A stretch of DNA of 64,000 bases from Macrostomum lignano. Its lineage: Eukaryota. The stretch's first letter is position 1, and each line of letters begins with the position of its first letter. The position numbers were made by a program, and so were the translations under genes. The notes below the pieces were generated by a model. It did not search any database. It had not been told where the DNA came from and saw only the letters and a program-made list of their open reading frames with translations. The DNA lies in NCBI GenBank assembly GCA_002269645.1, contig NIVC01002312.1, positions 1 to 64,000 of the forward strand, in the 5' to 3' direction. Below, in pieces: positions 916-51,723 of this stretch.

Positions 916-954
916 GTTAATTAATAAGTTACATGCCTACGTATCTGTCTTTCA

Positions 955-1530
<576 letters not shown>

Positions 1531-10201: not shown

Positions 10202-10822
10202 TCAAGCGTCCTCGGTTTCCATCGCCTCGGCATCCAGCGTCAGAGCCGCGCCGGCCTTGGCCCGCAGTTTGGCTCGCTTGGCCCTGGCCTCGGCGGCAGC
10301 CTTAGCAGTTGCCCGCTTGTCCAGCCGTTGCTGTTTAGCCGCGGCGGCGGCGGCGTCGGCTCCGGCCACCAGCCGCTTGGTGTCGGGATCGTAGATCTTC
10401 CTGGTGGCGTGCGGAGCCTGGACAAGATGCAGCTCCTGCTCCACCGACCGTACGTCGGCCAGTCGGCGCATCTCGGTGCCCTTGGCCAGGCGCTTGAGAA
10501 TATGAGACGCCTGTCGCTTCTGGCGCACTTGCACAATTTTGCGCATCGCTTCGACTGTCTGGGTCAGCGCCTCGCGGTTGTACTTTGGCAGAGTTGATCG
10601 GCGAGCCTCAAATGTCAAGCTGAGATCCTGGCTGAGGTCTTTGTTCCTAGCCATTCTGTACGCTTTAGTCCAGCGAGTCTTCCTGGGATTTCGCTTCTTT
10701 TTAAACGCTTTGTGACATTTGGAGCGGCAGAAGCGGAACTCGGTGGAGTCGTTGCGGACAAAACAGATGCCGTGGCCCGGGTAGATGTTGCTGGAGCAGA
10801 ACCAGCACTTTTGCAGGCGCAT
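10202..10822 (-). CDS. RSL24D1: Ribosome biogenesis protein RLP24 / RSL24D1 (L24e family), intronless CDS
   Basis: MRLQKCWFCSSNIYPGHGICFVRNDSTEFRFCRSKCHKAFKKKRNPRKTRWTKAYR is the RLP24 N-terminus with the TRASH zinc motif. It is a 206-aa ORF with an Ala/Lys-rich tail. Confidence 0.95.
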   Translation of the reverse strand: MRLQKCWFCSSNIYPGHGICFVRNDSTEFRFCRSKCHKAFKKKRNPRKTRWTKAYRMARNKDLSQDLSLTFEARRSTLPKYNREALTQTVEAMRKIVQVRQKRQASHILKRLAKGTEMRRLADVRSVEQELHLVQAPHATRKIYDPDTKRLVAGADAAAAAAKQQRLDKRATAKAAAEARAKRAKLRAKAGAALTLDAEAMETEDA

Positions 10823-16500: not shown

Positions 16501-19500
16501 GCATTTAAAAAATGTAAATTTATTAATAACACCACGCCATGCATACCGAAATTTTGCCATCAAGATATTACATGTAGGTAAACTAATACTAAAACAAATA
16601 ACAATTTTAGTACCTCGAGTGCAACAAGTCGACAACACTACTTTCAAGTTTAATTAATGCATTCATAGGTAGCAACAAGATAACTCTTAACAACACCCAA
16701 CAGCTCATGGAATTAAAAAGTTCACTCAGCCAGTCAATCCACAGAATCAACAAGTTCACTCAAGCCAGTCACTCCACAGAATCAACAAGTTCACTCCGCC
16801 AGTCACTCCACAGAATCACCAAGTTCACTCCGCCAGTCACTCCACAGAATCACCAAGTTCACTCCGCCAGTCACTCCACAGAATTGCCAAGATCACTCCG
16901 CCAGTCACTCCACAGAATTGCCAAGATCACTCCGCCAGTCACTCCACAGAATCACCAAGATCACTCAGCCAGTCACTCCACAGAATCACCAAGTTCACTC
17001 CGACAGTCACTCCACAGAATCACCAAGATCACTCCGCCAGTCACTCCACAGAATTGCCAAGATCACTCAGCCAGTCACTCCACAGAATCACCAAGTTGAC
17101 TCAGCCAGTCACTCAACAGAATCACCAAGTTCACTCAGCCAGTCACTCAACAGAATCACCTAGATCACTCCGCCAGTCACTCAACAGAATCACCAAGTTT
17201 ACTCAGTCAGTCACTCCACAGAATCACCAAGTTCACTCAGCCAGTCACTCAACAGAATCACCAAGTTCACTCAGCCAGTCACTCCACAGAATCACCAAGT
17301 TCACTCAGTCAGTCACTCCACAGAATCACCAAGTTCACTCAGTCAGTCACTCCACAGAATCACCAAGATCACTCAAGCCAGGCACTCAACAGAATCACCA
17401 AGTTCACTCAGTCAGTCACTCCACAGAATCACCAAGTTCACTCAGCCAGTCACTCCACAGAATCACCAAGTTCACTCTGACAGTCACTCCACAGAATCAC
17501 CAAGTTCACTCAGCCAGTCACTCCACAGAATCACCAAGTTCACTCTGACAGTCCCACCCGTCAGCCTCACCGCCTAGCAGCGAATGTGTCAGCGGCATCC
17601 TGGCCAGCAATAGACGAGGAGCCGGACTTCAACGGTCCAGACGGATAGCGCATGGCTCCGGCGTGGTGCCGTTTAGTCTGCGGCGCGGGCGCGGCGGCGG
17701 TGGCGGTGTCAGCCAGCTCGGCCGGGTCGATGCTCTTGAGAAAGCGAATGAGATCGCGAGCCAGATTCCAGTCCTCGCGGTCTAGAGCAGCGTCCAACAG
17801 TAAAGTGGCGTGCTGCTTGCTAACAATGGGTTTCTCGGTGTTCTCCAGTATGAGCAGGTAGGACGCGGCGGTCTTCAATTGGCCATTAACTAAGCTCACT
17901 TCGAATAGGTCTTTAGGACTGCCAACATTGGCGAATAGGTAGGGCCAGAGTGATACTTCGGTTTTCCTGGCGCACCTGGCCACGGTGTCCAGGTATTGGG
18001 CTGGGAACTCTTGTACAAAGGCCACCACCCTGGGCAAGAGAGGGTCCGGCACCGGCTCCTTGCTGGTGGCTTCCTCTTCTAGGACTTCGTGTAGTAGCAG
18101 CTCCAGGCAGTGGTTGAAGTAGGTGAGATGGGCGCTGGACTTGGCTATGTGCAGGGCGTGGTGGCCAAGACTGAAAGTGGACCAGGGATTAACCGATTGA
18201 GTCACTTTTGCGGAGCGGCTCAGATCTACTAAGGCGCATTGTTTGGAGTATGAAGGCGGATGGTGAGTGCAGACAGGTAGAGATAGGGGTAGACAGTGAG
18301 ATTTAGACAGTAGATGGTGAGATGCAGACAGGTAGAGATAGGGGTAGACAGTGAGATTTAGACAGTAGATGGTGAGATGCAGACAGGTAGAGATAGGGGT
18401 AGACAGTGAGATTTAGACAGTAGATGGTGAGATGCAGACAGGTAGAGATAGGGGTAGACAGTGAGATTTAGACAGTAGATGGTGAGATGCAGACAGATGA
18501 GGACAGAGTAGACAGTGAGATTTAGACAGTAGTAGATGGTGAGATGCAGACAGGTAGAGATAGGGGTAGACAGTGAGATTTAGACAGTAGATGGTGAGAT
18601 GCAGACAGATGAGGACAGAGTAGACAGTGAGATTTAGACAGTAGAAGATGGTGAGATGCAGACAGGTAGAGATAGGGGTAGACAGTGAGATTTAGACAGT
18701 AGACGGTGAGATGCAGACAGACGAGGACAGAGTAGACAGTGAGATGCAGACAGACGAGGACAGAGTAGACAGTGAGATGCAGACAAGTAGACCGGGAGTA
18801 GACAGTGAGATTTACAATTATTAAACAGTATGACTGGCAGCAGATTGATGACTCACTTTTTCCGCAGCAACTGTTTGACAATATGATTAAGGAAAATTTG
18901 ACTCTGAAATGAAAACAAATTGAATAGATACACAGTGACGTACCGTAAATGAAGAATAAATAGAATTCCAACGCAGCCAAATCAATTCTTACAGTTTTCT
19001 CAATGACATTGAAGGGCATCAAAGCCAGAGGCGAGATATTATCGGACGGCCCGGAGACTCGACCCTGGGACAGGGTCAGGCCAATCGACTGGGAGACTTC
19101 GTTAATACAGCTCAGGAATAGGACCTCCTCAAACAGTACAACTGCGGACGGTTAAGGGATTAGGGGATTTTGATAATCCACAGAATTTCCAACAATCCCA
19201 ACCCTTTTAACACAGAAAAATCTCCCTTTAGCTCACCTAGCGGATAAATCTCAACGCAGAATGGCAGCATAATCCGTTTGGACAGGTAGCCTTTAGACTC
19301 GCGATTCGATGATACCAGCGGTAGCCAGACTCGCATGCCCTGCAGGTGTGTTTAATGAGCACGATTGAGATATTTTGCATATTGGAATACACAGCTTTAT
19401 TGTTCATGATACGGACATTATCGGCCAGACCAGAGAGGAAAAAGATCAGTGAAGGATTAGGACAGGATTAGGACAGGATCAATAGGGGATTAGGGCAGGA

Positions 19501-35260: not shown

Positions 35261-35299
35261 ATCGCTTCTCGGCCTTATTGGCTAAGATCAAAGTGTAGT
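35261..35299 (+). ncRNA. U2: U2 snRNA gene, 5' half (nt 1-39), interrupted by a retrotransposon
   Basis: ATCGCTTCTCGGCCTTATTGGCTAAGATCAAAGTGTAGT is the U2 5' end (stem I plus the branch-point recognition GTGTAGT). Retroelement sequence follows immediately. Confidence 0.95.
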
Positions 35300-35302
35300 T
35301 TG

Positions 35303-36551
35303 ACGACTGGACGGCCAGCCTGGAGTGGCGCGACCCGCTGTCCGGAACTATCCAGCGCTGTGACAGAGCGGCAGCAATCACCCGGAGGCTTCACCAGGTG
35401 GTCAGGGCAGCGCACACGGCGGCCTGGCGCGGGTGCCACTCCCAGGGCCGATTCGCCACGACTGCCACGCACATCGGCAGCCACACCTGGCTGTTCAGCA
35501 GCACCGGCATGCGCGCCTGCGACTGGCGCTTCATCCACCGAGCGCGGCTCAACCTGGTGCCCACCAACGCACTCCGGAGACTGGCCGACCCGACATCCGA
35601 CCCGCGATGCCGCCGCTGCGGAGCCGGCGTCGAGACGCTCGGCCACGTGATCAACAGCTGCCCGGTGCACGCGGCCAGGTGGAGGGACCGCCACGACGGC
35701 ATCGTCAACGCCGTCGCCACCGCCATCAGCGAGGCCCGCCCAAACGCGACCATCACCACCGACCAGGAGGTCCTTCCCGGCTCTGATCTGCGACCTGACA
35801 TCAGCATCATGGATCCAGACAGAGGCCGCCGTCTCCTGATCGAAGTCAAGTCGCCGTTCGAGGTCGGGCCGGCCACGTTCCCACGCAAGCACCGAGCCGT
35901 ATGCCAGAAGTACGCCGGCATCACGCAGCAGCTCAGCGCAGAGGCACCAACGGCCCTGGCGACTTTCTGCATCGGCTCGCTGGGTGCCTGGTCGCCCTTC
36001 AACAACGCCATCCTGCGCGCTGCAGGCCTGCGCGAGCGCGACATCCGGCACCTCCAACGACGACTGGCGCTGCACTGCATCCACTGGAGCCGCAACACGT
36101 GGGTGGAGCACTGCACCGGCGCACCTCAAATCCACTGATTTAGTGCCGAACTCTGCCAAACTCTGCTCATCTCAGCCCACCCTGTTACCTTTACTTTTAC
36201 CTGTTTTATTTATCTTCCACTCTGCATTTTTGTTTTACTTTGTTTTTCTTTAATATTTTACTTTTTACTGTCTCGAAGTTCATGCACTCTGTTAGCTATT
36301 CTCGCTGCGATTCCGCCTCTCGCGCTCATCCCTGCCACCATCCCGTCTCCTGCGCCTTCACTTTTTCCCACTGTTTTAATTGCATTTATTTCATTGTTTT
36401 ACTGTTTTACGCATCCTGCGAACCTGTTTTTAGCTACTCTCAGTAGCATCATCGGCTCTTGGCCAAATATTTCCGCTTATATCGCATCGTTTAAATACTT
36501 AAATATATTGCCCGACCGTCGGATACTCGTCCGAGGGGCAGGGCCTTTCGC
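35303..36551 (+). mobile_element. 5'-truncated RLE non-LTR retrotransposon (Utopia-like, subfamily A) inside U2
   Basis: ORF to 36138 has the CCHC knuckle CRRCGAGVETLGHVINSC, RHDGIV, and PD...EVK restriction-like endonuclease motifs. A T-rich 3' UTR follows, and the 3' end abuts U2 nt 41. Confidence 0.92.
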
Positions 36552-36702
36552 TCTGTTCTTTAGAGATTAATTCCTCTAACGTAGGCCATTGGTCTACTAA
36601 GTAATTAATCCGGTTTTTGATGAGTCGGACCAGTGCTTCGTGTTCACACGACCTGATCCACGCGTAGGCCTTGCGCTGCAGTACAGCAAGGATCTGCGCA
36701 TC
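36552..36702 (+). ncRNA. U2: U2 snRNA 3' half (nt ~41 to end), copy 1
   Basis: TCTGTTCTT; stem IIa TAGAG-ATTAATTC-CTCTA; IIb GTAGGCC-ATT-GGTCTAC; Sm site GGTTTTTG; stem III; stem IV with loop GCTGCAGTAC. With the 5' half it totals ~191 nt. Confidence 0.92.
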
Positions 36703-36749
36703 TAAGAAATCTAAAATAGCGAAGGCGGAGTCATGGCAGTATCAAGGAG

Positions 36750-38961
36750 TGCGCGCTGCAGGCCTGCGCGAGCGCGACATCCGGCACCTCCAACGACGAC
36801 TGGCGCTGCACTGCATCCACTGGAGCCGCAACACGTGGGTGGAGCACTGCACCGGCGCACCTCAAATCCACTGATTTTGTGCCGAACTCTGCCAAACTCT
36901 GCTCATTTGCCATGAGCATTTGTCATTTGCCAAACTCTGGCCCACCCTGTTACCTTTACTTTTACCTGTTTTTTTATCTTCCACTCTGCATTTTTGTTTT
37001 ACTTTGTTTTTCTTTAATATTTTACTTTTTTACTGTCTCGAAGTTCATGCACTCTGTAAGCATTTTTCGCTGTGATTCCGCCTCTCGCGCTCATCCCCGC
37101 CGCCATCCCGTCTCCTGCGCCTTCACTTTTTCTCACTGTTTTAATTGCTTACTCCAATGTTTTACTGTTTTACGCATCCTGCGAACCCGTTTTTAGCTAC
37201 TTCGAGCGCGCACGTCAAATCCTCCGCCGCATCGTCTACCTTCCGACGCAGTCCTCGACAGACTACCTCTACGCCGACAGATGCCACGGCGGCCTTGGCC
37301 TGTCCCTAGCGAAGGAGGAGGCAGCCGTCCAGAAGGTCACCGAGGCCATCAGGCGACTCTGCTGCACCGACGCCGCGCTCAGAGAGCTAGCCTGGGCCGA
37401 ACTGCGCGGCCTGGTCCAACGCCGCCTACGGCTCCGGGCTGCACCTGTTTGACCTCGCGACGTCGCCGACTTCCTCAATGGCGCAGCACTGCCACCCAGC
37501 GGAGAAACGGCCAGCTGGTGGTTCCAAGTCCGCCACGCCACCCGCGAGGTGCTCCACGCGACCGGGCTGCGCTTCACCATCAGCAACGACTGGACGGCCA
37601 GCCTGGAGTGGCGCTGCAACCGCTCGACCGCTCGAGAAGTGCTGCAACCGCTCGACCTGAAGTTCCGCATTGAGCAGGACTGGACTGTGCGTCTGGAGTG
37701 GCGGCACCCGCTGTCTGGGGCGGTCGAGCAGCTCCAACGGATCAGCGCGGCCACGCGCAAGCTGCACGAGGTCGTCAGATCGGCGCACACATCGGCGTGG
37801 CGGCAATGCCGCTCCCAGGGCCGCTTCGCGACGACGGCGACACACATCGGCGGGCACACCTGGCTGTTCAACAGCACCGGGATGCGCGTGTGTGACTGGC
37901 GCTTCGTACATCGCGCCCGCCTCAACCTCATTCCAACGAATGCGACGCGGCGGCTCGCTGACCCGACAGCCGACGCCCGCTGCAGGCGATGCGGCGCTGA
38001 GGCGGAGACCCTCGGTCATGTCCTTAGCGCCTGCCCTGTGCATGCGGGACGATGGAGAGACCGCCACGACGGCGTCGTCAGCGCGATCGCCGGTGCCATC
38101 CAGAAGGCCTGTCCGACTGCGACGGTGCTCAACGATCAGGAGGTGCTGCCTGGTTCTGGCCTCCGTCCCGACATCAGCGTCGAGGACCCGGCTCGAGGAC
38201 GGCGCCTGCTGATCGAAGTCAAGACACCGATGGAGGCCGGCCCGACTACCTATTCGCGTAAGCACCGGGCCGTCTGCGAGAAATACGCTGGCCTGACCCA
38301 GCGGCTGAAGGAGGACGCACCTACGGCCCTGGCGACTCTTTGTGTCGGAGCGCTTGGCTCCTGGTCGCCGCACAACAACACCATCCTGCGTGCGGCCGGG
38401 CTCGCCGAGCGCGTCATTCGCAGCCTCCAGCGCCAGCTTGCGCTCCACTGCATCCACTGGAGCCGCAATTCGTGGGTGGAGCACTGCACGGGCGCCCCGC
38501 AAGCTTTCTGATGCACCTGTGCCTGTGCCTTCGCCTGACCGTTTTGGGTCTCCGCGCTTTCTGACCCCAATTATTGCCCGTTGCTCCTTTTGGGACGTCC
38601 GCGCCTGTTTTCACCACCTTTATATCTCATTTATCTATTTTGCATTTAATACTCTCTCACCCATCCTTTTTTTATCCATTTTGGTCTATTTTATTTTATT
38701 TCTTTTTTATTTCATCCTTTTGTTTTCGTCTGCTTTTACTGCCACTCCCCTTTTTATCCCGCTTCCCGTTGTCTTCTAAAAGTCTTTTGAAACGCTTTAT
38801 TCTGCTCAATTTGCTTTAACTTTCGCCGCTCTATTTCTTTTGCATGAGCCCTCGCTCGCCGTCGCCTTTACAATCATCTGTCCTCGCCTACTAATTTCCT
38901 TTAATACTTAAATATATTGCCCCCACTCTCGGTAGCTCGTCCGAGGGGCAGGGCCTTTCGC
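36750..38961 (+). mobile_element. Chimeric retroelement segment: subfamily A 3' fragment, then A internal fragment, then subfamily B RLE domain and 3' UTR
   Basis: 36750-37197 re-enters the A 3' end (..CTGAPQIH*). 37200-37610 is A post-RT sequence. ~37615-38511 is a diverged RLE ORF (CRRCGAEAETLGHVLSAC, RHDGVV, PD..EVK, ..CTGAPQAF*) with a different 3' UTR. Confidence 0.88.
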
Positions 38962-39112
38962 TCTGTTCTTTAGAGATTAATTCCTCTAACGTAGGCCATT
39001 GGTCTACTAAGTAATTAATCCGGTTTTTGATGAGTCGGACCAGTGCTTCGTGTTCACACGACCTGATCCACGCGTAGGCCTTGCGCTGCAGTACAGCAAG
39101 GATCTGCGCATC
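38962..39112 (+). ncRNA. U2: U2 snRNA 3' half, copy 2
   Basis: Identical by eye to 36552-36702 (offset 2410). Confidence 0.92.
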
Positions 39113-39159
39113 TAAGAAATCTAAAATAGCGAAGGCGGAGTCATGGCAGTATCAAGGAG

Positions 39160-41182
39160 TGCGCGCTGCAGGCCTGCGCGAGCGCGACATCCGGCACCTC
39201 CAACGACGACTGGCGCTGCACTGCATCCACTGGAGCCGCAACACGTGGGTGGAGCACTGCACCGGCGCACCTCAAATCCACTGATTTTGTGCCGAACTCT
39301 GCCAAACTCTGCTCATTTGCCATGAGCATTTGTCATTTGCCAAACTCTGGCCCACCCTGTTACCTTTACTTTTACCTGTTTTTTTATCTTCCACTCTGCA
39401 TTTTTGTTTTACTTTGTTTTTCTTTAATATTTTACTTTTTTACTGTCTCGAAGTTCATGCACTCTGTAAGCATTTTTCGCTGTGATTCCGCCTCTCGCGC
39501 TCATCCCCGCCGCCATCCCGTCTCCTGCGCCTTCACTTTTTCTCACTGTTTTAATTGCATTTACTCCAATGTTTTACTGTTTTACGCATCCTGCGAACCC
39601 GTTTTTAGCTACTTCGAGCGCGCACGTCAAATCCTCCGCCGCATCGTCTACCTTCCGACGCAGTCCTCGACAGACTACCTCTACGCCGACAGATGCCACG
39701 GCGGCCTTGGCCTGTCCCTAGCGAAGGAGGAGGCAGCCGTCCAGAAGGTCACCGAGGCCATCAGGCGACTCTGCTGCACCGACGCCGCGCTCAGAGAGCT
39801 AGCCTGGGCCGAACTGCGCGGCCTGGTCCAACGCCGCCTACGGCTCCGGGCTGCACCTGTTTGACCTCGCGACGTCGCCGACTTCCTCAATGGCGCAGCA
39901 CTGCCACCCAGCGGAGAAACGGCCAGCTGGTGGTTCCAAGTCCGCCACGCCACCCGCGAGGTGCTCCACGCGACCGGGCTGCGCTTCACCATCAGCAACG
40001 ACTGGACGGCCAGCCTGGAGTGGCGCGACCCGCTGTCCAGAACTATCCAGCGCTGTGACAGAGCGGCAGCAATCACCCGGAGGCTTCACCAGGTGGTCAG
40101 GGCAGCGCACACGGCGGCCTGGCGCGGGTGCCACTCCCAAGGCCGATTCGCCACGACTGGCGCTTCATCCACCGAGCGCGGCTCAACCTGGTGCCCACCA
40201 ACGCGCTCCGGAGACTGGCCGACCCGACATCCGACCCGCGATGCCGCCGCTGCGGAGCCGGCGTCGAGACGCTCGGCCACGTGATCAACAGCTGCCGGTG
40301 CACGCGGCCAGGTGGAGGGACCGCCACGACGGCATCGTCAACGCCGTCGCCACCGCCATCAGCGAGGCCCGCCCAAACGCGACCATCACCACGACCAGGA
40401 GGTCCTTCCCGCTCTGATCTGCGACCTGACATCAGCATCATGGATCCAGACAGAGGCCGCCGTCTCCTGATCGAAGTCAAGTCGCCGTTCGAGGTCGGGC
40501 CGGCCACGTTCCCACGCAAGCACCGAGCCGTATGCCAGAAGTACGCCGGCATCACGCAGCAGCTCAGCGCAGAGGCGCCAACGGCCCTGGCGACTTTCTG
40601 CATCGGCTCGCTGGGCGCCTGGTCGCCCTTCAACAACGCCATCCTGCGCGCTGCAGGCCTGCGCGAGCGCGACATCCGGCACCTCCAACGACGACTAGCG
40701 CTGCACTGCATCCACTGGAGCCGCAACACGTGGGTGGAGCACTGCACCGGCGCACCTCAAATCCACTGATTTTGTGCCGAACTCTGCCAAACTCTGCTCA
40801 TCTCAGTCCGCTCTGTTACCTTTACGACTTTACCTGTTTTATTCATCTTTCACTCTGCATTTTTGTTTTACTTTGTTTTTCTGTAATATTTTACTTTTTA
40901 CTATCTCGTAGTACACGCACTCTGTAAGCTATTTCGCTGCGATTCCGCCTCTCGCGCTCATCCCTGCCGCCATCCCATCTCCTGCGCCATCACTTTTCCC
41001 CACTGTTTTAATTGCATTTCATTGTTTTACTGTTTTACGCATCCGCGAACCCGTTTTTAGCTACTCTCAGTAGCATCATCAGGCTCTTGGCCAAATATTT
41101 CTGCTTATATCGCTTATTGTGTTTAATACTTAAATATATTGCCCGACCGTCGGATACTCGGCCGACGGGCAGGGCCTTTCGC
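39160..41182 (+). mobile_element. Chimeric/deleted subfamily A retroelement segment
   Basis: 39113-40020 duplicates 36703-37610, then continues as A with small deletions and frameshifts to the stop at 40769, followed by the 3' UTR. Confidence 0.88.
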
Positions 41183-41333
41183 TCTGTTCTTTAGAGATTA
41201 ATTCCTCTAACGTAGGCCATTGGTCTACTAAGTAATTAATCTGGTTTTTGATGAGTCGGACCAGTGCTTCGTGTTCACACGACCTGGTCCACGCGTAGGC
41301 CTTGCGCTGCAGTACAGCAAGGATCTGCGCATC
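41183..41333 (+). ncRNA. U2: U2 snRNA 3' half, copy 3 (variant)
   Basis: Same as copies 1 and 2 except AATCTGG and GACCTGGTCC, the latter perfecting stem III pairing with GGACCAG. The downstream flank continues ...AAGGAGTACTGTAC. Confidence 0.92.
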
Positions 41334-41902
41334 TAAGAAATCTAAAATAGCGAAGGCGGAGTCATGGCAGTATCAAGGAGTACTGTACATGTATATAGCT
41401 ATGTACGGTGGTCCTTTGGGTGGTAGGAAGAACGTAGAATACCGACGTCAGATGCAAAACTGACGCGGCCGACCTCCCTGTGCCTTCGCCTGGTCGCCCG
41501 CGGTATCCACGCGCCCTTCTCTCTCGTTGCCATTTGCTTCCCCTTTGACTTTTGCTCCTGTTTTCACCCGTCTACATCTTATACATTTTACATTTTATGT
41601 ATCTATTTATCATTTATTTCATCCTCCTTTACCTTTTTAATCATTTCGACTCACTTTTCTATTCTATCCTTTCGTTTTCGCTCTTATCTTACTTCTACTC
41701 TCTCGTTTTTATCCCCAGATATTCTTTTTCCTCTAAAATCTTTTTGAAATGCGCTCCCGCCTTCTTTTTTGCTTCAAATTGCTTTAACAATCGCCGCCCC
41801 CGTGCGACACCGTGACGTCGCCGACTTCCTGAATGGCGCGACGCTACCATCAAGCGGCGGGACATCCAGCTAGTGGTTTCAAGTGCGCCACGCCGTCCGA
41901 GA

Positions 41903-41927
41903 GGCCTTATTGGCTAAGATCTGTAGT
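41903..41927 (+). ncRNA. U2: U2 5' remnant (nt ~11-39, lacking AAAG) at the 5' junction of the near-full-length element
   Basis: GGCCTTATTGGCTAAGATC-TGTAGT versus GGCCTTATTGGCTAAGATCAAAGTGTAGT at 35271-35299. Confidence 0.8.
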
Positions 41928-44900
41928 TCGGCTCGGCTCGGTTCGGCTCGTCATGCTTCGCCTCGGGTGCTCCACTTCACAGTAACATCGCCGTCTCGGC
42001 CTTTGGATCCACTGCTCGACTATAGTGGCGGAATATGTACACATGCAAGTGCGGCCGTCAATTTAGGTCCGAGCGCAACCTTTACGCCCATGCCGGCATC
42101 TGCAAGAACTCGGCTACCTCGCCCAGCGGCAGCAGCCTCGATCGACCCCAACAGCGTCGAATCAAGCGACTGAGGCAGCGGCTACCAGCAGCAGACGACA
42201 GTCTGGAGCAGCGCTGCCGAGGGAGGTTTGCCCGGCCTGCCGTAAGACACTGACAGCCAAAGGCATGTCTCGGCACTTAAACACCTGCGCAGAGAGGCAA
42301 CGCGCGGCCGGTAACTACGAGGCTGCGGCCAAGGCAAAAGCAGCAACGGACGCGCGGCATCGGTGCACGTACAGATGCGGCGCACAATTCACCACAGCAC
42401 GCGCCCGCAACATCCACGCCGCCAGGTGCAGACCAAGGACTGACGCCAAGCTGGAGAACGCAGTCGCATGCCGGCACTGCCACACGATTTTCTCCACTGC
42501 TAGGTGGGCACGCCACGCGGCCCTCTGCGCCACGAGACGGGGCGCCACGGCACCAGCAGTCGAACCAGCGGCACCGGCAGCCGTAGCGGCGCCAGCAGCT
42601 CCGGTGGTGACGTCGGCGGCACCAGCAGTTCCCGCGGCTCCAGTAGCATCAGTGGTGGAGACAGCAGCAGCACCGGCAGCAGCGGCAGCGGCGACAGCAG
42701 CAGCACCGGCGGCAGCAGCACCGGCGGCAGCGGCAACGGCGACAGCAGCAGCACCGGCGGCAGCAGCACCGGCAGAAGCAGCAGCGGCGACAGCAGCAAC
42801 AGCGGCGGCAGCAGCACCGGCGGCAGCGGCAGCGGCGACAGCAGCAGCTCCGGCGGCAGCAGCACCGGCGGCAGCGGCAGCGGCGACAGCAGCAGCTCCG
42901 GCGGCAGCAGCATCGGCGGCGGCTCCAGCGGCAACGGCGGCTCCAGCAGCACCCGCGGCTTTGGCTCCAGAAGCGCCAACCACAACCGCGGCGGCAGCAT
43001 GCCTCCAAGCGATCGCCAACCTACCAGAGGACGACGCAACAGCATGGCCAGAGTTCTGCACCGCCTGCGACAGCTTCATCATCGCCGCACAGCCCGAGAA
43101 CAACCGCAGAGGGAGGGGCGGACCAAGGCACAACGACAACCTTGCCGCACGGTACGCGAGAAACCGTCGCGAAGCCATGCGCGAGACCCTAGGCGAAGCC
43201 CGAGTCGAATGCGCGGTCCCCCTCGCTGACGTCGAAGCCGAATTTCGCCGGAGGTACGCCGACAGAGGACCCCGCGACTGGGACAGTGATGCGGCATACA
43301 TCCCAAAGGCGACCACCGCAGACCTCAGCACAGCGGAAACGATAACGGCAGCGGACGTACGGCGCGCCCTCAAGGGTCGGACGGACTCTGCGCCCGGCAA
43401 CGACGGCCTACGGTACTCCGACCTGACCAAGGCCGACCCGTCCGGACAAGCACTGGCCGCAATCTTCGACCTCTGCCTGCGCCGATTCCACCGCGTCCCG
43501 CCCAGCTGGAAGAGCTACCGCACCATCCTGCTGTTCAAGAAGCCGGACCGGTACATCGCCGCCCAAGAATCCGACCTGTCCAAATGGACACGTGCTACAA
43601 GATCCTGGCAGCCATCCTGGCGGAGCGGGTCACGCGGTGGGCGTCCGACGCCGACCTGATCAGCCCAGAACAACGTGGCGGACTCCAGTACGAAGGCTGC
43701 GCCGACCACAATTATGTTCTGAGAGCTTGCCACGACGACGCGCGCCGCCGCAAAGCTGTCCTCGACGCCGCCTTCGTGGACCTCCGCGACGCCTTCACAA
43801 GCGTCCTGCATGACCTCATGTTCGGCCAGCTCGAGCGAGGCGGCCTAGACGCAGTCACACAGGCCCTCATCCAAGACATCTACGCCGACAACGTTACTGC
43901 GGTGTACACCGGCCCTGATCAGGCGACTGCCGACATCCCCGTTGAGAGCGGTGTTCGGCAAGGTTGCCCGCTGTCCCGCTACCTTCCGACGCGGTCGTCG
44001 ACAGACTACCTCTACGCCGACAGATGCCACCGCGGCCTTGGCCTGTCCCTAGCGAAGGAGGAGGCAGCCGTCCAGAAGGTCACCGACGCCGCGCTCAGAG
44101 AGCTAGCCTGGGCCGAACTGCGCGGCCTGGTCCAACGCCGCCTACGGCTCCGGGCTGCACCTGTTTGACCTCGCGACGTCGCCGACTTCCTCAATGGCGC
44201 AGCACTGCCACCCAGCGGAGAAACGGCCAGCTGGTGGTTCCAAGTCCGCCACGCCACCCGCGAGGTGCTCCACGCGACCGGGCTGCGCTTCACCATCAGC
44301 AACGACTGGACGGCCAGCCTGGAGTGGCGCGACCCGCTGTCCGGAACTATCCAGCGATGCGACAGAGCGGCAGCAATCACCCGGAGGCTTCACCAGGTGG
44401 TCAGGGCAGCGCACACGGCGGCCTGGCGCGGGTGCCACTCCCAAGGCCGATTCGCCACGACTGCCACGCACATCGGCAGCCACACCTGGCTGTTCAGCAG
44501 CACCGGCATGCGCGCCTGCGACTGGCGCTTCATCCACCGAGCGCGGCTCAACCTGGTGCCCACCAACGCGCTCCGGAGACTGGCCGACCCGACATCCGAC
44601 CCGCGATGCCGCCGCTGCGGAGCCGGCGTCGAGACGCTCGGCCACGTCATCAACAGCTGCCTGGTGCACGCGGCCAGGTGGAGGGACCGCCACGACGGCA
44701 TCGTCAACGCCGTCGCCACCGCCATCAGCGAGGCCCGCCCAAACGCGACCATCACCAACGACCAGGAGGTCCTTCCCAGCTCTGATCTGCGACCTGACAT
44801 CAGCATCATGGATCCAGACAGAGGCCGCCGCCTCCTGATCGAAGTCAAGTCGCCGTTCGAGGTCGGGCCGGCCACGTTCCCACGCAAGCACCGAGCCATA

Positions 44901-45240
44901 TGCCAGAAGTACGCCGGCATCACGCAGCAGCTCAGCGCAGAGGCACCAACGGCCCTGGCGACTTTCTGCATCGGCTCGCTGGGCGCCTGGTCGCCCTTCA
45001 ACAACGCCATCCTGCGCGCTGCAGGCCTGCGCGAGCGCGACATCCGGCACCTCCAACGACGACTAGCGCTGCACTGCATCCACTGGAGCCGCAACACGTG
45101 GGTGGAGCACTGCACCGGCGCACCTCAAATCCACTGATTTTGTGCCGAACTCTGCCAAACTCTGCTCATCTCAGCCCACCCTGTTACCTTTACTTTTACC
45201 TCTTTTACTTATCTTCCACTCTGCATTTTGTTTAACTTGT
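41928..45240 (+). mobile_element. Near-full-length Utopia-like non-LTR retrotransposon (zinc fingers, Ala/Pro linker, RT, RLE), frameshifted and internally deleted
   Basis: ATG 42035. Four C-C-H-C fingers: CKC..H..C; CPAC..RHLNTC; CTYRC..H..C; CRHC..H..C. RT motifs include APGNDG, YKILAAIL, VDLRDAF and GVRQGCPLS. The sequence jumps at ~43975 straight to post-RT sequence with no YADD motif. The RLE ORF ends at 45137. Confidence 0.92.
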
Positions 45241-48200
45241 TGTCTCCTGCCTGCCCTTCCATCTCAGACTACGCGACGCCGATTGAACGCTACTGGGCAA
45301 TCAGCGGTGCAAGTTGCAAGAACGGCAGCGTGCGGAGCTGGGCTTTGATGAGAGGGCCCACCTACCACCTGCCAGCAGAGTCGACGATTGACTACCTTTA
45401 CGCCGACAAGCGTCACAGTGGTCTCGGACTGCCCCTGCTTAAAGAAGAAGCCGCCATTCAGAAGGTTGTCGAGGCGCTAATGCGTCTTGGAAGCAGCGAT
45501 GAGATCTTGCGCGACATTGCCTGGACGGAGCTACAAGATTTGGTTCGTCGTCGGCTTTGATGAGTCGTCGGCAGCCGGCTTGACGCCAGCCGAACTCTGC
45601 TGCGCTGCCCTCAACGACCTGCCTGAGGACGACGAGCGAGCATGGCCTGAGTTTTGCACGGCCTGCGACTCCCTCGTTGCCACCGCTATCCCGGATGAGC
45701 GCCGCGGTTGTGGAGGGCCTCACGGACGGTGTGGTTCTCCCAATACCAGTCTGGCGGCTCGCTACGCAAAAAAATCGAAAGCGCGCGATGCGGAACATTG
45801 CGCATTGAATGCACTGTGCCCATTGCGGACATCGACACCGACTTTCGACAACGCTATGCAGATCGTGGGCTACAAGACTGCCCGACCGCCCACCGGCCCG
45901 CTCCTGCTTGCCGCGACACCTTTACGGCGGAGCCAATTACTCCAGCAGATGTCAACCTGAAAACGGTACCGCACGGTGTTACTATTCAAAAAGCCGGACA
46001 GGTATGAGGCCGGGCAGGAATCTGACCTATCCAAATGGCGCCCAATAACTCTGCTGGACACCATCAATAAAATCTTTGCGGCGGTTCTAATCGAGCGTGT
46101 TCTACAATGGGCGACTTTGGCGGAGCTCATCAGCCCGAGGCAGCGCGGAGGCCTCCACTATGAAGGTTTTGCCGACCACAACTACGTGCTGCGCGCCTGC
46201 CGCGACGACGCATGACGCCGCAAGGTGACGCTGGACGCTGCCTTCCTAGACCTCCGTGACGCCTTCACCAGCGTGACTCACGACCTGCTATTTGGATCCC
46301 TGGAGCGGGCGGAAATGGACGGAGACACCTTAGCGCTCTTTGGGACATTTCCGCGGAGAACGTGACCGCTATCCATGCCGGCGAAGACCGCGTCATCCCC
46401 GATATTCCGGTTGAAAGCGGAGTGCGCCAGGGCTGCCCCCTCTCGGGAGTCCTTTTCGCGTTATGCATGGAGCCCCTCCTTCGTGCGCCGGATCCTGTCG
46501 ACGGCTACCTACTGCATGGACACCATCAGCTCAACCTTGCGTACGCTGATGACGCGGCGTTCGTCACGAGCAGCGGGGCCGCTCTTCGGCGCGTGGTCGC
46601 GGCGATTGACAAGGCAGCAGACTGGGCAGGCCTCACCATCAACCCGGGCAAGTGCGGCCGCCTTACCATCAACGGCGGCCCGGCCGAGGAGGCGGATCTA
46701 CAGGTCGCTGCGGGCCCCATCCGGAACCTTACCGAGGACGAGACCTACGAGTACCTGGGCGTCCCGGCAGGTGAACGACGTTCTGCGTCTGTTGGCGCCT
46801 TACTCGAGCGGGCGCTCCGAGAGCTCACAGCGGTGGCGAACTGTGACCTCCTGCAATGGCAAAAGCTGAACGCTTACCGCACCTTTGTGGTCTCCCGCCT
46901 GCCTTTTCATTTCAGGCTACGCGACGCCGACTGGACGCTGCTGGGCAACCAGCGACGCAAGTTGCAAGGCCGACAGCGCGTGGAGTAGGGCTATGACGAG
47001 AGGGCACGCCAGATCATCCGGCGCGTCGCCTACCTGTCAGCGGAGTCGACGGTCGACTACCTTTACGCCGACAAGCTCCATGGTGGCCTTGGGCTGCCGC
47101 TGCTCAAAGAGAAAGCCGCCATCCAGAAGGCAGCGACGAGATACTGCGCGACATTGCCTCGACCGAGCTACCGTGACGTCACCGACTTCCTGAATGGCGC
47201 GACGCTACCACCAAGCGGTGAGACATCCATCTGGTGGTTTCAAGTGCGCCACGCTGTCCGAGAGGTCCTGCAGCCGCTCGACCTGAAGCTCCCCATCGAA
47301 CAAGACTGGACTCTGCGTCTGGAGTGGCGGCACCCGCTGTCTGGGGCGGTCGAGCAGCTCCACCGGATCAGCGCGGCTACGTGCAAGCTGCACGAGGTTG
47401 TCCGATCGGCGCACACGGCCGCATGGCGCCAATGCCGCTCCAAGGGCTGCTTCGCGACGACGGTGATGCACATCGACCGACACACTTGGCTGTTCAATAG
47501 CACCGGGATGCGCGTATGTGATTGGCGCTTTGTACAACGAACCCGCCTCAACCTCATTCCGAAAAATGCGATGCGGCGGCTTGCTGACCCGACAGCCGAC
47601 GCCCGCTGCAGGCGATGCGGCACGGAGTCGGAGACTCTCGGCCACGTCCTTGGCGCCTGTCGTGTGCACCACGGAGGGATCACCACGTCGGCGTCGTCAG
47701 CGCGATCGCGGGCGCCATTCAAAAGGCGTGCGTGACTGCGACGTTGCTCAGCGACCAAGATGTGCTGCTGGCTCTGGCCTACGTCCCAAAATCAGCATGG
47801 ATGACCCGGCCCGAAGACGGCACATGCTGATCGAACTCAAAACACGGAGACCGGCCCGGCTACCTACTCGCGAAAATACCGCGCCATCTCGAGAATTACG
47901 CTTGCCGCAGACACACCTACGGCCCTTACATTTGCTGCGTCTGTGTCTTGTGATGTCCTTGTCTTCCCCGCTGGCCGCGGAGGCGCAGGACACGAACGAG
48001 GTTGTCTGGCTGGGCGGGCGGCGTATCTTCGGAAGGTCTGTGCTTGTGCGGACCATTGGTCGTTCCCATTTAAGGCCTGAGTCCAGGGGCCCCCGGGGCT
48101 CTGACTGGTTGCTCATGTCAGTGGGAGTCCCTTCTTGGAGGGTGTGTGTCGTGCGCTTGGCTCTTTGTCACCGCACAACAACACTATCCTGCGTGCTGCC

Positions 48201-48340
48201 GGGCTCGCCGAGAGCGTCATCCGCAGCCTTCAGCGTCAGCTTGCGCTCCATTGCATCCACTGGAGCCGCAATACGTGGGTGAGAGCACTGTACGGGTGCA
48301 CCGCAAACTTTCTTACGCACCCGACCTTCCTACGCCTTCG
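45240..48340 (+). mobile_element. Older, degraded RLE retroelement copy and shards (subfamily B/C-like)
   Basis: Fragmented frames retain PITLLDTINKIF, GVRQGCPLSGVLF, LAYADD, GLTINPGKC, YEYLGV, CRRCGTESETLGHVLGAC and HCIHWSRNTWV, with many frameshifts and stops. Confidence 0.88.
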
Positions 48341-48409
48341 GCTGGTCGCCCGCAGTCTCCAAGCTTGGTGTGAAACGAGGGTAGGAAGCAGTGCTGTGTG
48401 CTGCCCGCG

Positions 48410-49320
48410 AATCAGCCCGGGGAGGGGCTCTGCCGCTGGATTACAGGGGCCCATCTACCAGGGGCATAAAGCCCGAGCGGCCCAGGTTGAGACCAGGACT
48501 CATGGCCTGGAAAAACATCTTAATTGGTGCTACTAGCCCAAGCCTATGGACTAAGACACCGCCAACCCATAGTGGAATCAGGGACGGTGCTAGGACCGAG
48601 TCCACTCAAGCCATCCCCCCCCCCAACGACAAAACCCAAGTGTGCGCGCAAAAATTTTCCCAAATTTTGGAAAAGCGGTCCGAGAGTGGGGAAAACCCCG
48701 AAGTCTACGGAAAAGGCTTTAGATTGGAGCGAATCTGCGCAGCTTATTTACCAAGGGCGAGTCTCCTATCAGAAGGCCGAATTGCACAAAGCTCCTCCTA
48801 TGGGGCTGCGAGCCTCAAGGCTTTTTCACTAACCAGCTCTAAACAATTGGAGAATGCTTAAGCGGTCCGAGAGAGGAAATATCCTAGTCTACGGAAAAGG
48901 CTTATCTATTGGAGCGAGTCGGGAAGATTATTGCGATGGGCGAGTCTCCTATCAGGCAGGTGACCAAAACTACCTATAGGGCTGCGAGCCTCAAGGCTTT
49001 TTCGCTATCCAGCTCAGTATAAAGGCCAGGCCAAGGGGTTGGAGAGGGGCACAAGGAGCAAGAGGAACCCGGACTCAGCCGGACGAACTCTTCCCCGGGA
49101 CTCTAGTCCACTGTCAGAGATGAGAGCCAAGACACAAAGGCAGGGAACTTCCAGAAGAGACAGCAGGTGGACCGAGGCTGTGGAGCGCGCTCACCGAGGC
49201 GAGACCTTCAACTCCGAATTTTGGGTGGCTCCAGTGACAAGATAAAACCAAGGGCTAAAACATGGGGAGATAAAGCTGGGGAGGATCACACAACCTCAGG
49301 GGCTCAGCCTCGGGGCTGGC
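48410..49320. repeat. ~0.9-kb interspersed direct repeat, copy A (with two internal ~185-bp subunits)
   Basis: Colinear with 50790-51723, sharing blocks such as CAAGCCTATGGACTAAGACACCGCCAACCCA and GCAAGAGGAACCCGGACTCAGCC. Confidence 0.85.
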
Positions 49321-50710: not shown

Positions 50711-50789
50711 CAGAATACTCTACAGGTAAAAACAGTCAGATACCGTCTTTGTTGTTGTTAATCGAGGGTGGGAAGCCAGGGGCCCCGCG

Positions 50790-51723
50790 GATCAGCCCAA
50801 GTAGGGCTCTGCCGCTGGGATCTACCAGTGGGCCATACTGCCAGGGGCATATAGCCCGAGAGGCCACGATTGGGACCAGGGCCTAAAGGCCTGGACATAC
50901 CTAATTGGGGCTACTAGCTCAAGCCTATGGACTAAGACACCGCCAACCCAAGGTGGAATCAGGGACGGTGCTAAGACCGAGTCCACCCAAGCCACCCCCC
51001 AACGACAAGACCCGGGAGTGCGCGCAAAAAGATTGGAGTTTAGAAAGCGCGGTCCGAGAGTGGGGAAACCCCAAAGTCTACGGAAGTAGTGCTTTAGATT
51101 GGAGAGTCTGGGCAGCTTATTTACTAAGGCCGAAGCTCCTATCAAGAGTAGATTATTGCAAGACCTCCTATAGGGCTGCGAACCACAAGGCTTTTTCACT
51201 ACCCAGCTTTAAACAGTATTGGAGTATTTAAGCGGTCCGAGAGAGGAAATATCCTAAGTCTGTGGAATAGGGCTTATCTATTGGAGCGAGTCTAGAAGCT
51301 TATTGCCAAGGGCGAGTCTCCTGTCAAGCAGGAAGACCGTCTACCTACAGGGCTGCGAGCCTCAAGGCTTTTTCGCTATCCAGCTCAATAAGGGCCAGGC
51401 CAAGGGGTCGGAGAGGGGCACCAGGGGCAAGAGGAACCCGGACTCAGCCGGTATTCCCCGATTCGGGACGAACTTATTCCCCAGGACTCCAATCCAACTG
51501 TCAGTGATGAGAGCCAAGACACAATAAGCAGGGAGACTACCAGAGGAGCCAGCAGATGGACCAAGGCAAGCAAGATGAACCAGGCAGGGAGGGCAGAGCT
51601 CATTACTCCAAAGATTGGATGGCTTCGAGGCCGGGGATAAAAGCACAAAGCTAAAACACAAAGGAATAAAAAATGGGAGGAGCACCTGCTGAACCCTCAA
51701 CCTGGGGCTCAGACTCAGGGCTG
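50790..51723. repeat. ~0.9-kb interspersed direct repeat, copy B
   Basis: Diverged copy of 48410-49320 with the same two-subunit structure. Confidence 0.85.

What the first reader, a model, noticed from the sequence alone, without database searches (positions are those of the whole stretch)
36500..41440. Three element-3'-end/U2-3'-half units in tandem but only one complete U2 5' half
Seen: element end plus U2 3' half occurs at 36552, 38962 and 41183. After copies 1 and 2 the U2 downstream flank stops at ..CAAGGAGT and jumps directly into element sequence (GCGCGCTGCAGG). Only copy 3 keeps the continuing flank (..GAGTACTGTAC). Segment ~36520-37610 is duplicated at a 2410-bp offset. Inference: the U2 3' half and ~50 nt of flank travel with the element, either by 3' transduction with template jumping or by unequal crossover. 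That would make a retroelement-U2 pseudogene array.
Basis: partly seen in the sequence, partly recalled or inferred. Interest (0 to 1): 0.72.

Follow-up and report, generated by a model that had tools for sequence, protein, structure and literature searches.

The report
U2-gene-specific retrotransposon pile-up (Utopia)
A U2 snRNA gene of the flatworm Macrostomum lignano has been hit repeatedly, at one exact nucleotide, by a known kind of site-specific jumping gene (Utopia), and local copying has multiplied the back half of the gene; the locus is real and tidy but mostly ordinary for this element family.

Summary
U2 nt 39 to the 3' end starts at 36552, 38962 and 41183. Each copy follows the element end GGGCAGGGCCTTTCGC and carries the same 48-nt flank. 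GAGT|GCGCGC occurs twice, and only copy 3 keeps the natural flank.

The element is an R2-like reverse transcriptase with a C-terminal restriction-like endonuclease. Its relatives in a tick, a scorpion and metagenome contigs also sit just upstream of U2 nt 39. This is Utopia (Kojima & Jurka 2015), so the U2 3' half is target DNA, not transduced cargo. That paper already reports tandem insertions, missing 5' halves and a surplus of disrupted U2 genes.

The window comes from M. lignano Mlig_3_7, a phylum not on the 2015 host list.

Two details are new.
- The GAGT boundary lies on a look-alike of the target (AGT|ACTGT versus AGT|A|TCTGT), in the same register as both U2 5' junctions. This suggests the element's own endonuclease cut there.
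- The duplicated 1.09-kb block has no substitutions and carries two internal non-homologous junctions. It is therefore one recent homology-dependent copy, linked to a chimeric A/B element. It is not repeated 3' transduction.

Interest is modest.

The parts
35261..35299 (+). U2 snRNA gene 5' part (nt 1-37, ATCGCTTCTCGG...AAAGTGTAGT) with native AT-rich upstream DNA. The upstream flank ends at ..AGT|.
   Evidence: Exact motif. Weak Rfam U2 hit at 35261-35339, 30.4 bits. Joined to copy 3 it reproduces the U2 consensus minus A38.
35300..36551 (+). E1: a 3-nt filler (TTG) plus a 5'-truncated A-subfamily element. It holds the CCHC knuckle and restriction-like endonuclease ORF (35398-36138) and the 3' UTR (36139-36551).
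36552..36750 (+). U2 nt 39 to the 3' end (to about 36706) plus downstream flank ending ..CAAGGAGT. Copy 1.
36751..37201 (+). Ea: an A-type fragment with the last ~124 nt of the ORF plus a 3' UTR that lacks its last ~113 nt. It is joined to ..GAGT with at most 1 nt of microhomology.
   Evidence: blastn to 36014-36438, 40645-41065 and 45013-45241; alignment
37202..37614 (+). EbL: an A-type ORF segment (reference aa ~764-905) carrying an in-frame TGA at 37450. It ends at ..CTGGAGTGGCGC.
37615..37629 (+). A 15-nt filler, TGCAACCGCTCGACC, which is a slipped copy of 37643-37657. It lies at the A/B chimeric junction.
   Evidence: read directly from the sequence; boundary
37630..38961 (+). B-subfamily 3' portion. 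The ORF is open to the stop at 38509-38511 and restarts 23 aa upstream of the homologous A position (LEWR|CNRSTA|REVLQ). The 3' UTR is 38512-38961.
38962..39160 (+). U2 nt 39 to the end plus the 48-nt flank. Copy 2, identical to copy 1.
39161..39612 (+). Second copy of Ea.
39613..41182 (+). Eb: a contiguous 5'-truncated A-type element. Its first 414 bp equal EbL. The rest is 96.4% identical to E1, with a 55-bp deletion and frameshifts.
41183..41478 (+). U2 nt 39 to the end plus the 48-nt flank (to 41381), then the continuing natural flank. The target look-alike AGT|ACTGT lies at 41379-41386.
41479..41902 (+). A diverged B-type 3' UTR fragment lacking its last ~130 nt, followed by a ~100-bp B-type ORF fragment (92% to 47170-47269).
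41903..41927 (+). Partial U2 5' piece, GGCCTTATTGGCTAAGATC-TGTAGT. It also ends at ..AGT|.
41928..45241 (+). 5'-complete A-type copy with four C2HC-like zinc-finger motifs, an Ala/Pro-rich 48-bp repeat and an RT. It lacks reference aa ~590-773 (RT palm), has frameshifts, and is cut off within its 3' UTR.
45242..48350 (+). Old, rearranged B-type remains. The RT with YADD is at 46356-47660. The copy is frameshifted and its 3' UTR is interrupted by another repeat.

Best explanation
**Shown.** The locus is a U2 snRNA gene of Macrostomum lignano occupied by several copies, from two subfamilies (A and B), of a non-LTR retrotransposon. The element encodes an R2-like reverse transcriptase and a C-terminal restriction-like endonuclease. 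Every element 3' end abuts U2 nt 39 (TCTGTTCTT). Every U2 5' piece ends at nt 37 (..GTAGT). This is the Utopia family's canonical target site. The U2 3' halves are therefore target DNA left downstream of each target-primed reverse transcription event, not cargo.

**Inferred, step 1 (origin of ..GAGT|element).** An element re-entered the already occupied site. First-strand priming used the surviving downstream half-site. The canonical upstream half-site had been displaced by E1. The endonuclease therefore made its second, top-strand cut at the nearest look-alike, AGT|ACTGT, 48 nt past the U2 gene.
- If this look-alike belongs to the same gene, the cut duplicates the 199 bp between the two cuts.
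- If it belongs to an upstream neighbour in a U2 array, the cut deletes the spacer and the 5' half.

Either way the result is a U2 3' half plus 48 nt followed directly by a 5'-truncated element.

**Inferred, step 2 (third copy).** A 1.09-kb block was copied once, very recently, by a homology-dependent process. The block holds U2 3' half + 48 nt + Ea + EbL. The process could be unequal crossover, gene conversion or repair synthesis. It was linked to insertion of a B-type element, whose 5' end joined an A-type copy through a 15-nt slipped filler.
For: **Family and target**
- RVT_1 hits.
- The best solved relatives are R2 proteins, for both the RT (8gh6, E 2.3e-9) and the C-terminal knuckle plus endonuclease (9nl2, E 3.7e-5).
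- The CCHC, RH, PD and (D/E)-V-K columns are invariant across homologues.
- Three exact element|TCTGTTCTT junctions.
- Homologue loci in Ornithodoros, Centruroides and two metagenome contigs also sit just upstream of U2 nt 39. One of these (L005) has three U2 3' halves and no 5' half.
- All of this matches Kojima & Jurka 2015.

**Step 1**
- All three 5' junctions end at ..AGT|.
- The intact flank reads AGT|ACTGT against the U2 target AGT|A|TCTGT.
- The motif AGTA[N]CTGT occurs 7 times in 128 kb of both strands, and 5 of those are in one tandem repeat.

**Step 2**
- No substitutions in 1089 bp, against 2-8% divergence between other paralogous pairs.
- Two non-homologous junctions are copied inside the block.
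- The block's right end is exactly the A/B chimeric junction, with a filler and a 23-aa overlap.
Against: **Step 1**
- It rests on one independent junction and a motif match noticed after the fact.
- A top-strand cut 199 bp from the first cut is far beyond what is described for this class. From my own knowledge the offset is 2 bp for R2. The 2015 paper gives 20-bp duplications for reptile Utopia.
- The junction at 41478|41479 is not at a look-alike.

**Step 2**
- Sequence alone cannot separate unequal crossover, gene conversion, DNA repair synthesis and reverse transcription of a read-through transcript of the locus. All of these are homology-guided.

**Assembly**
- Mlig_3_7 is a PacBio draft of a neopolyploid genome with known collapsed or expanded regions.
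- Two blocks identical except for a 2-bp indel are also what an assembly error could give.
Confidence: 0.55

Rival explanations
1. RNA-level origin. The locus is transcribed from the U2 promoter and reads through the U2 3' end into the next element. The reverse transcriptase jumps between templates, from B RNA to an A-type read-through RNA. This writes U2 3' half + 48 nt + Ea + EbL into a single cDNA.
For: - The junctions have fillers or 0-4 nt of microhomology. One contains a 15-nt slipped repeat. Both are typical of template switching.
- The partial U2 5' piece fused to the 5'-complete copy at 41903-41927 fits co-transcription with U2.
- From my own knowledge, R2 reverse transcriptase jumps end-to-end between templates in vitro, and LINE-1 makes U6/L1 chimeras this way.
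Against: - It needs a template RNA that already contains the composite, so it does not explain the first GAGT|GCGC junction.
- No RNA data are available.
- ..GAGT has no recognisable 3'-end signal, and it lies downstream of where a 3' box would direct cleavage.
- The same product arises by DNA-level homology-dependent copying.
Confidence: 0.2
2. Independent insertions into neighbouring genes of a tandem U2 array, as proposed for Phytophthora. Each insertion deletes the target gene's 5' half and the spacer back to the previous gene's flank.
For: - Relatives sit in tandem U2 arrays with 0.6-1.2-kb spacers (tick L002, metagenome L003).
- The 2015 paper reports missing 5' fragments upstream of Utopia copies.
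- It could account for the first GAGT|element junction and for the two differences between U2 copy 3 and copies 1/2.
Against: - It cannot explain copies 1 and 2. Two independent events would not produce the same 5' truncation point, the same internal Ea|EbL junction and 1089 bp without a substitution.
- No spacer or promoter sequence of a second gene survives in the window.
Confidence: 0.15
3. Assembly artefact. The true locus has fewer units, and the third was created by expanding a repeat or merging paralogous subgenome copies.
For: - The assembly is documented to contain collapsed or expanded haplovariants, and most regions exist in three paralogous copies.
- The two blocks differ only by a 2-bp indel, a typical long-read consensus error.
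Against: - The two units have different right-hand partners (B-type versus A-type).
- A false join would have to pass through only about 225 bp of shared sequence (B end + U2 3' half + flank) into Ea. Reads containing B-U2-flank-Ea must therefore exist.
- Every junction type would still be real. Only the copy number could be wrong.
Confidence: 0.1

Closest known systems
Utopia (U2 snRNA gene-specific non-LTR retrotransposons, NeSL clade; Kojima & Jurka 2015, PMC4640811)
   Same: - The same insertion point, with downstream U2 starting at nt 39 (TCTGTTCTT).
- The same protein layout: N-terminal zinc fingers, RT, then a C-terminal zinc knuckle plus PD-(D/E)xK endonuclease.
- No target duplication at the primary insertion, as in arthropod families.
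- Several families co-resident in one U2 locus.
- Tandem insertions.
- Disrupted U2 3' halves outnumber 5' halves and intact genes.
   Different: - The host is a flatworm, and Platyhelminthes are not in the paper's Table 1.
- The C-terminal domain is only 33-38% identical to the nearest database relatives.
- The second cut appears to lie at a look-alike site 48 nt past the gene.
- A 1.09-kb composite block is duplicated without any substitution.
- All copies in this window are defective.
R2 (28S rDNA-specific non-LTR retrotransposons)
   Same: - The closest solved structures for both the RT and the C-terminal endonuclease region.
- The same logic of target-primed reverse transcription at one site of a multicopy RNA gene.
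- 5'-truncated copies with variable 5' junctions.
- Turnover by recombination in the host array.
   Different: The target is U2, not 28S. No Myb domain was detected. Sequence identity is low.
Keno (Tx1-group elements inserted at the same U2 site)
   Same: An identical 3' flanking U2 sequence, according to the 2015 paper.
   Different: Keno carries an apurinic/apyrimidinic-type endonuclease. The elements here have a C-terminal restriction-like endonuclease and no AP-endonuclease region.
LINE-1 3' transduction and U6/L1 template-switch chimeras
   Same: snRNA sequence joined to retroelement sequence. The junctions have fillers or microhomology.
   Different: - Here the snRNA part is the genomic target, at a fixed nucleotide and with native flank. 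It is not a retro-copied RNA.
- There is no poly(A), no new target site after the flank, and no dispersal to new loci within the window.

Membership tests
Utopia | Insertion into U2 snRNA genes, with the downstream flank starting at U2 nt 39 | tested here: met
   Three exact element|TCTGTTCTT junctions. Rfam alignments show U2 model positions 38-192 downstream. The 5' pieces end at nt 37.
Utopia | C-terminal zinc knuckle plus PD-(D/E)xK restriction-like endonuclease | tested here: met
   Invariant C71/C74/H83/C88, R98-H99, D134, V150 and K171-Y172 in alignment A1. Best PDB match is the R2 protein, residues 872-1085.
Utopia | Non-LTR-type reverse transcriptase in the middle of one ORF | tested here: met
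   RVT_1 at 43584-44168 and 46362-46988. Best PDB match is the R2Bm RT. The scorpion full-length ORF maps colinearly. The single intact ORF could not be confirmed, because all copies are broken.
Utopia | One to three N-terminal zinc-finger motifs | tested here: met
   Four C-x2/3-C...H-x3-C motifs at 42037-42540 in the 5'-complete copy, split by one frameshift.
Utopia | Relatives by sequence are themselves U2-associated | tested here: met
   Tick L002, metagenome L003 and L005, and scorpion L001 (short U2 fragments) all show U2 nt 39 downstream of the homologous gene. L006 and L007 had no U2 hit.
Utopia | RT phylogeny places the element inside the Utopia/NeSL lineage | not testable with these tools
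   No Repbase reference sequences are available here.
Keno | AP-type endonuclease upstream of the RT | tested here: not met
   Nothing but zinc fingers and an Ala/Pro repeat lies upstream of the RT. The endonuclease is C-terminal and restriction-like.
R2 | Insertion into 28S rDNA | tested here: not met
   All junctions are with U2.
3' transduction (LINE-type) | The transduced flank lies between the element's 3' end and a new, unrelated target site | tested here: not met
   ..GAGT is followed by the 5'-truncated start of another element copy, not by a target site. The 'flank' is the family's own target.

The most novel reading that the evidence does not exclude
When a Utopia element re-enters an occupied U2 site, the canonical upstream half-site is no longer adjacent. 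Its endonuclease then makes the second-strand cut at the nearest target look-alike downstream, here AGT|ACTGT, 48 nt past the gene. The whole U2 3' half plus flank is duplicated with each re-insertion. If this is general, it would be a built-in mechanism for the unexplained surplus of 5'-less U2 halves reported for Phytophthora and Nasonia. It would also show that second-strand cleavage in restriction-like-endonuclease retrotransposons is sequence-guided at a distance.
Probability: 0.3. Interest if true: 0.5.

Novelty: new member of a known kind. Interest (0 to 1): 0.33.

Why it matters
- **Host range.** It places the U2-targeting Utopia lineage in a flatworm model organism. This extends a host range already argued to be ancient.
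- **Mechanism.** It gives a clean, datable example of how U2 3' halves multiply without 5' halves. One duplication has no substitutions, and an older pair differs at 2 of 199 sites. The 2015 description left this point open.
- **Annotation.** Covariance-model annotation calls these three fragments full-length U2 genes, because the element's terminal hairpin imitates U2 stem-loop I. U2 gene counts in such genomes will therefore be inflated.
- **Second-strand cleavage.** The look-alike-site observation, if it holds genome-wide, bears on how R2-like enzymes choose the second-strand cut. Those enzymes are now being developed for site-specific gene insertion.

Tried and rejected
- **Classical 3' transduction.** Rejected. 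No new target site follows the flank, and the 'transduced' part is the family's target.
- **Two independent insertions for units 1 and 2.** Rejected. The units share identical truncation points, an identical internal junction, and 1089 bp without a substitution.
- **Keno-type element.** Rejected, because there is no AP endonuclease.
- **Simple tandem duplication of a 2410-bp unit.** Rejected. Only 1089 bp of the period is shared. The remainder is B-type in unit 1 and A-type in unit 2, at about 75% identity.
- **A chimeric 3'-terminal hairpin in E1 as proof of recombination.**
  - The A-type left arm sits with a B-like right arm, giving a G.G mismatch.
  - I judged this ambiguous, because E1 and Eb differ by about 7% in the 3' UTR.
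  - E1 could also be an evolutionary intermediate of a compensatory change.
- **Other copies in the same genome.** The protein database holds no M. lignano copies of the element; the best hit is 38% identical. So exact-protein look-ups could not reach other loci.
- **Homeologous loci.** No called gene lies within 10 kb of the locus, so the homeologous copies could not be fetched.
- **Literature.** No paper links Macrostomum and Utopia.
- **The look-alike idea in L005.** Its three U2 copies are 10-18% diverged and the boundaries are too blurred to test it.
Full report

Yes. Exact-motif searches find the U2 3' part (TCTGTTCTTTAGAG...) at 36552, 38962 and 41183. Each copy is preceded by GGGCAGGGCCTTTCGC. 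Each is followed by the same 48-nt flank ending CAAGGAGT.

The junction CAAGGAGT|GCGCGCTGCAGG occurs at 36743 and 39153 only. The natural flank ACTGTACATG... follows only copy 3.

The duplicated segment is 36526-37614 = 38936-40026. It has no substitutions and one 2-bp indel. U2 copies 1 and 2 are identical. Copy 3 differs at 36611/41242 and 36656/41287, and only copy 3 keeps the stem pairing.

Rfam reports all three as full-length U2 (78-84 bits). The alignments show model positions 27-37 missing. The branch-point-binding GUAGUA is among them. A hairpin at the very end of the element is aligned to U2 stem-loop I.

The true 5' part (nt 1-37), with native upstream DNA, is at 35261-35299. A second, partial 5' piece lies at 41903-41927. 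No intact U2 gene exists in the window.

**2. What is the element?**

- ORFs between the U2 pieces carry RVT_1.
- They also carry a C-terminal CCHC knuckle followed by RH...PD...(D/E)-V-K. These columns are invariant across homologues.
- The nearest solved structures for both parts are R2 retrotransposon proteins.
- The 5'-complete copy (41928-45241) begins with four C2HC-like zinc fingers.
- Database relatives are distant, at 33-38% identity. They come from arachnids, a coral and metagenomes.

Those relatives show the same genomic context.
- In the tick Ornithodoros turicata (L002), two metagenome contigs (L003, L005) and a scorpion (L001, short fragments), the homologous gene is followed by U2 starting at TCTGTTCTT.
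- L005 has three U2 3' halves, each with a flank conserved for roughly 50 nt, and no 5' half in 12 kb.

This is the Utopia family of Kojima & Jurka 2015. The paper describes:
- downstream U2 starting at nt 39;
- no target duplication in arthropod families;
- tandem insertions in Nasonia;
- several families sharing one array;
- missing 5' fragments in Phytophthora;
- disrupted U2 genes outnumbering intact ones.

The U2 3' half is therefore the target remnant, not cargo.

**3. Source organism.**

The RLP24 ORF at 10202-10822 is recorded on NIVC01002312.1 of GCA_002269645.1. This is the Mlig_3_7 PacBio draft of Macrostomum lignano. The species is a neopolyploid, and this assembly is known to contain collapsed or expanded regions.

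Platyhelminthes are not in the 2015 host table. I found no paper that links Macrostomum and Utopia.

**4. Anatomy of the locus.**

Reading left to right:
- U2 nt 1-37
- TTG filler
- E1 (A-type, 5'-truncated)
- [U2 nt 39-end + 48 nt]
- Ea (A-type ORF tail plus a 3' UTR lacking its last ~113 nt)
- EbL (A-type ORF)
- 15-nt slipped filler
- B-type ORF tail plus 3' UTR
- [U2 nt 39-end + 48 nt]
- Ea
- Eb (EbL continued seamlessly as A-type, 96.4% identical to E1)
- [U2 nt 39-end + 48 nt + natural flank]
- B-type fragments
- partial U2 5' piece
- 5'-complete A copy with its RT palm deleted
- old B-type remains

All copies are defective. All A-type copies share an in-frame TGA. The chimeric A/B ORF in unit 1 is otherwise open for 435 codons, which suggests a recent B insertion.

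**5. How the repeats arose.**

*Origin of the GAGT boundary.*
- All three 5' junctions end the upstream DNA at ..AGT|. This holds for both U2 5' pieces and for the 48-nt flank.
- The undisturbed flank reads AGT|ACTGT. The U2 target reads AGT|A|TCTGT.
- The motif AGTA[N]CTGT occurs only 7 times on both strands of the window, and 5 of those are in one tandem repeat.
- I infer that the element's endonuclease made its second cut at this look-alike during re-insertion at an occupied site.
- That cut either duplicates the 199 bp between the two cuts, or deletes a spacer plus 5' half in a tandem array.
- This inference rests on one junction and a motif noticed after the fact.

*Origin of the third copy.*
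- The block has no substitutions and contains two copied non-homologous junctions.
- Its right boundary lies exactly at the A/B chimeric junction.
- It therefore arose as one recent homology-dependent copy.
- Three routes give the observed order:
  - unequal crossover between the E1-U2 and Eb-U2 repeats (1.45 kb, 96%), followed by a B insertion that replaced the middle A-type tail;
  - a B insertion at E1|U2 whose cDNA end invaded the downstream A copy and copied back to E1;
  - reverse transcription of a read-through transcript.
- Sequence alone does not separate these three routes.

**6. Verdict.**

The '3' transduction / pseudogene array' half is not.

The locus is a new, distant member of a known family, in a new host phylum, and it behaves as that family is known to behave. 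The look-alike-site cut is the one point that could add something to the mechanism.

Noticed in passing
window 36526-36706, 38936-39116, 41157-41337: Rfam scores these 5'-less U2 fragments as full-length U2 (model 1-192, above the gathering score). The element's terminal hairpin (CGA.GGGC AGG GCCU.UCG) is fitted to U2 stem-loop I. The same happens in the tick and metagenome loci. Automated U2 gene counts would be inflated.
   Followed up: yes
window 36509-36545, 38919-38955, 41140-41176: A 3'-terminal stem-loop, GCCC..[7-bp stem]..GGGC, is conserved between subfamilies A and B, whose 3' UTRs are otherwise diverged. One pair is compensatory (A: G-C; B: C-G). E1 carries the A left arm with a B-like right arm, giving a G.G mismatch. 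The stem-loop is possibly the RT recognition element.
   Followed up: partly
window 37450-37452, 39862-39864, 44166-44168: All A-type copies share an in-frame TGA. The diverged B-type fragment at 41801-41902 has CGA at the same position. The A subfamily may therefore be non-autonomous and mobilised in trans, or spread only by local DNA copying.
   Followed up: partly
window 35303, 37614, 37630, 41900: Four breakpoints cluster within about 75 nt of the same ORF region (REVL...LEWR). They are the E1 5' truncation, the end of the duplicated block, the start of the B part, and the end of the stray B ORF fragment. This could be a hot spot for RT stalling or template switching, or a trace of recombination among the copies.
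   Followed up: no
window 41903-41927: A U2 5' piece lacking nt 1-11 and 'AAAG' is fused to the 5' end of the only 5'-complete copy. It is preceded by element debris rather than a promoter. It looks as if U2 5' sequence was carried on the element RNA through co-transcription from the U2 promoter.
   Followed up: partly
window 42540-42960: An Ala/Pro-rich low-complexity stretch lies between the zinc fingers and the RT of the element ORF. It is built from 48-bp tandem repeats that are 80-90% alike.
   Followed up: no
L003 1236-1300 and 2063-2090: In the closest relative's contig, U2 nt 39-71 is present twice in tandem right after the element end. The next U2 gene, 640 bp downstream, is cut at nt 28 and followed by non-U2 sequence.
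   Followed up: no
L002 2850-2916, 9099-9252; L005 2534, 5424, 6458: The tick array keeps U2 5' pieces, two per unit, with different element families in successive, 97-98% identical U2 + spacer units. Metagenome contig L005 has three U2 3' halves, with a flank conserved for roughly 50 nt, and no 5' half. This is the same pattern as in the window.
   Followed up: partly
window 48404-49178 and 50784-51567: An unrelated repeat, two copies at 82% identity, interrupts the 3' UTR of the old B-type element.
   Followed up: no
window 933-1583, 14955-15157, 16707-17548: Long microsatellite or minisatellite tracts. One is a (CTAT)-type run that reads as (LSIY)n. One is a ~51-bp tandem repeat. One is a run of repeated '[13 protein letters not shown]' units.
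   Followed up: no
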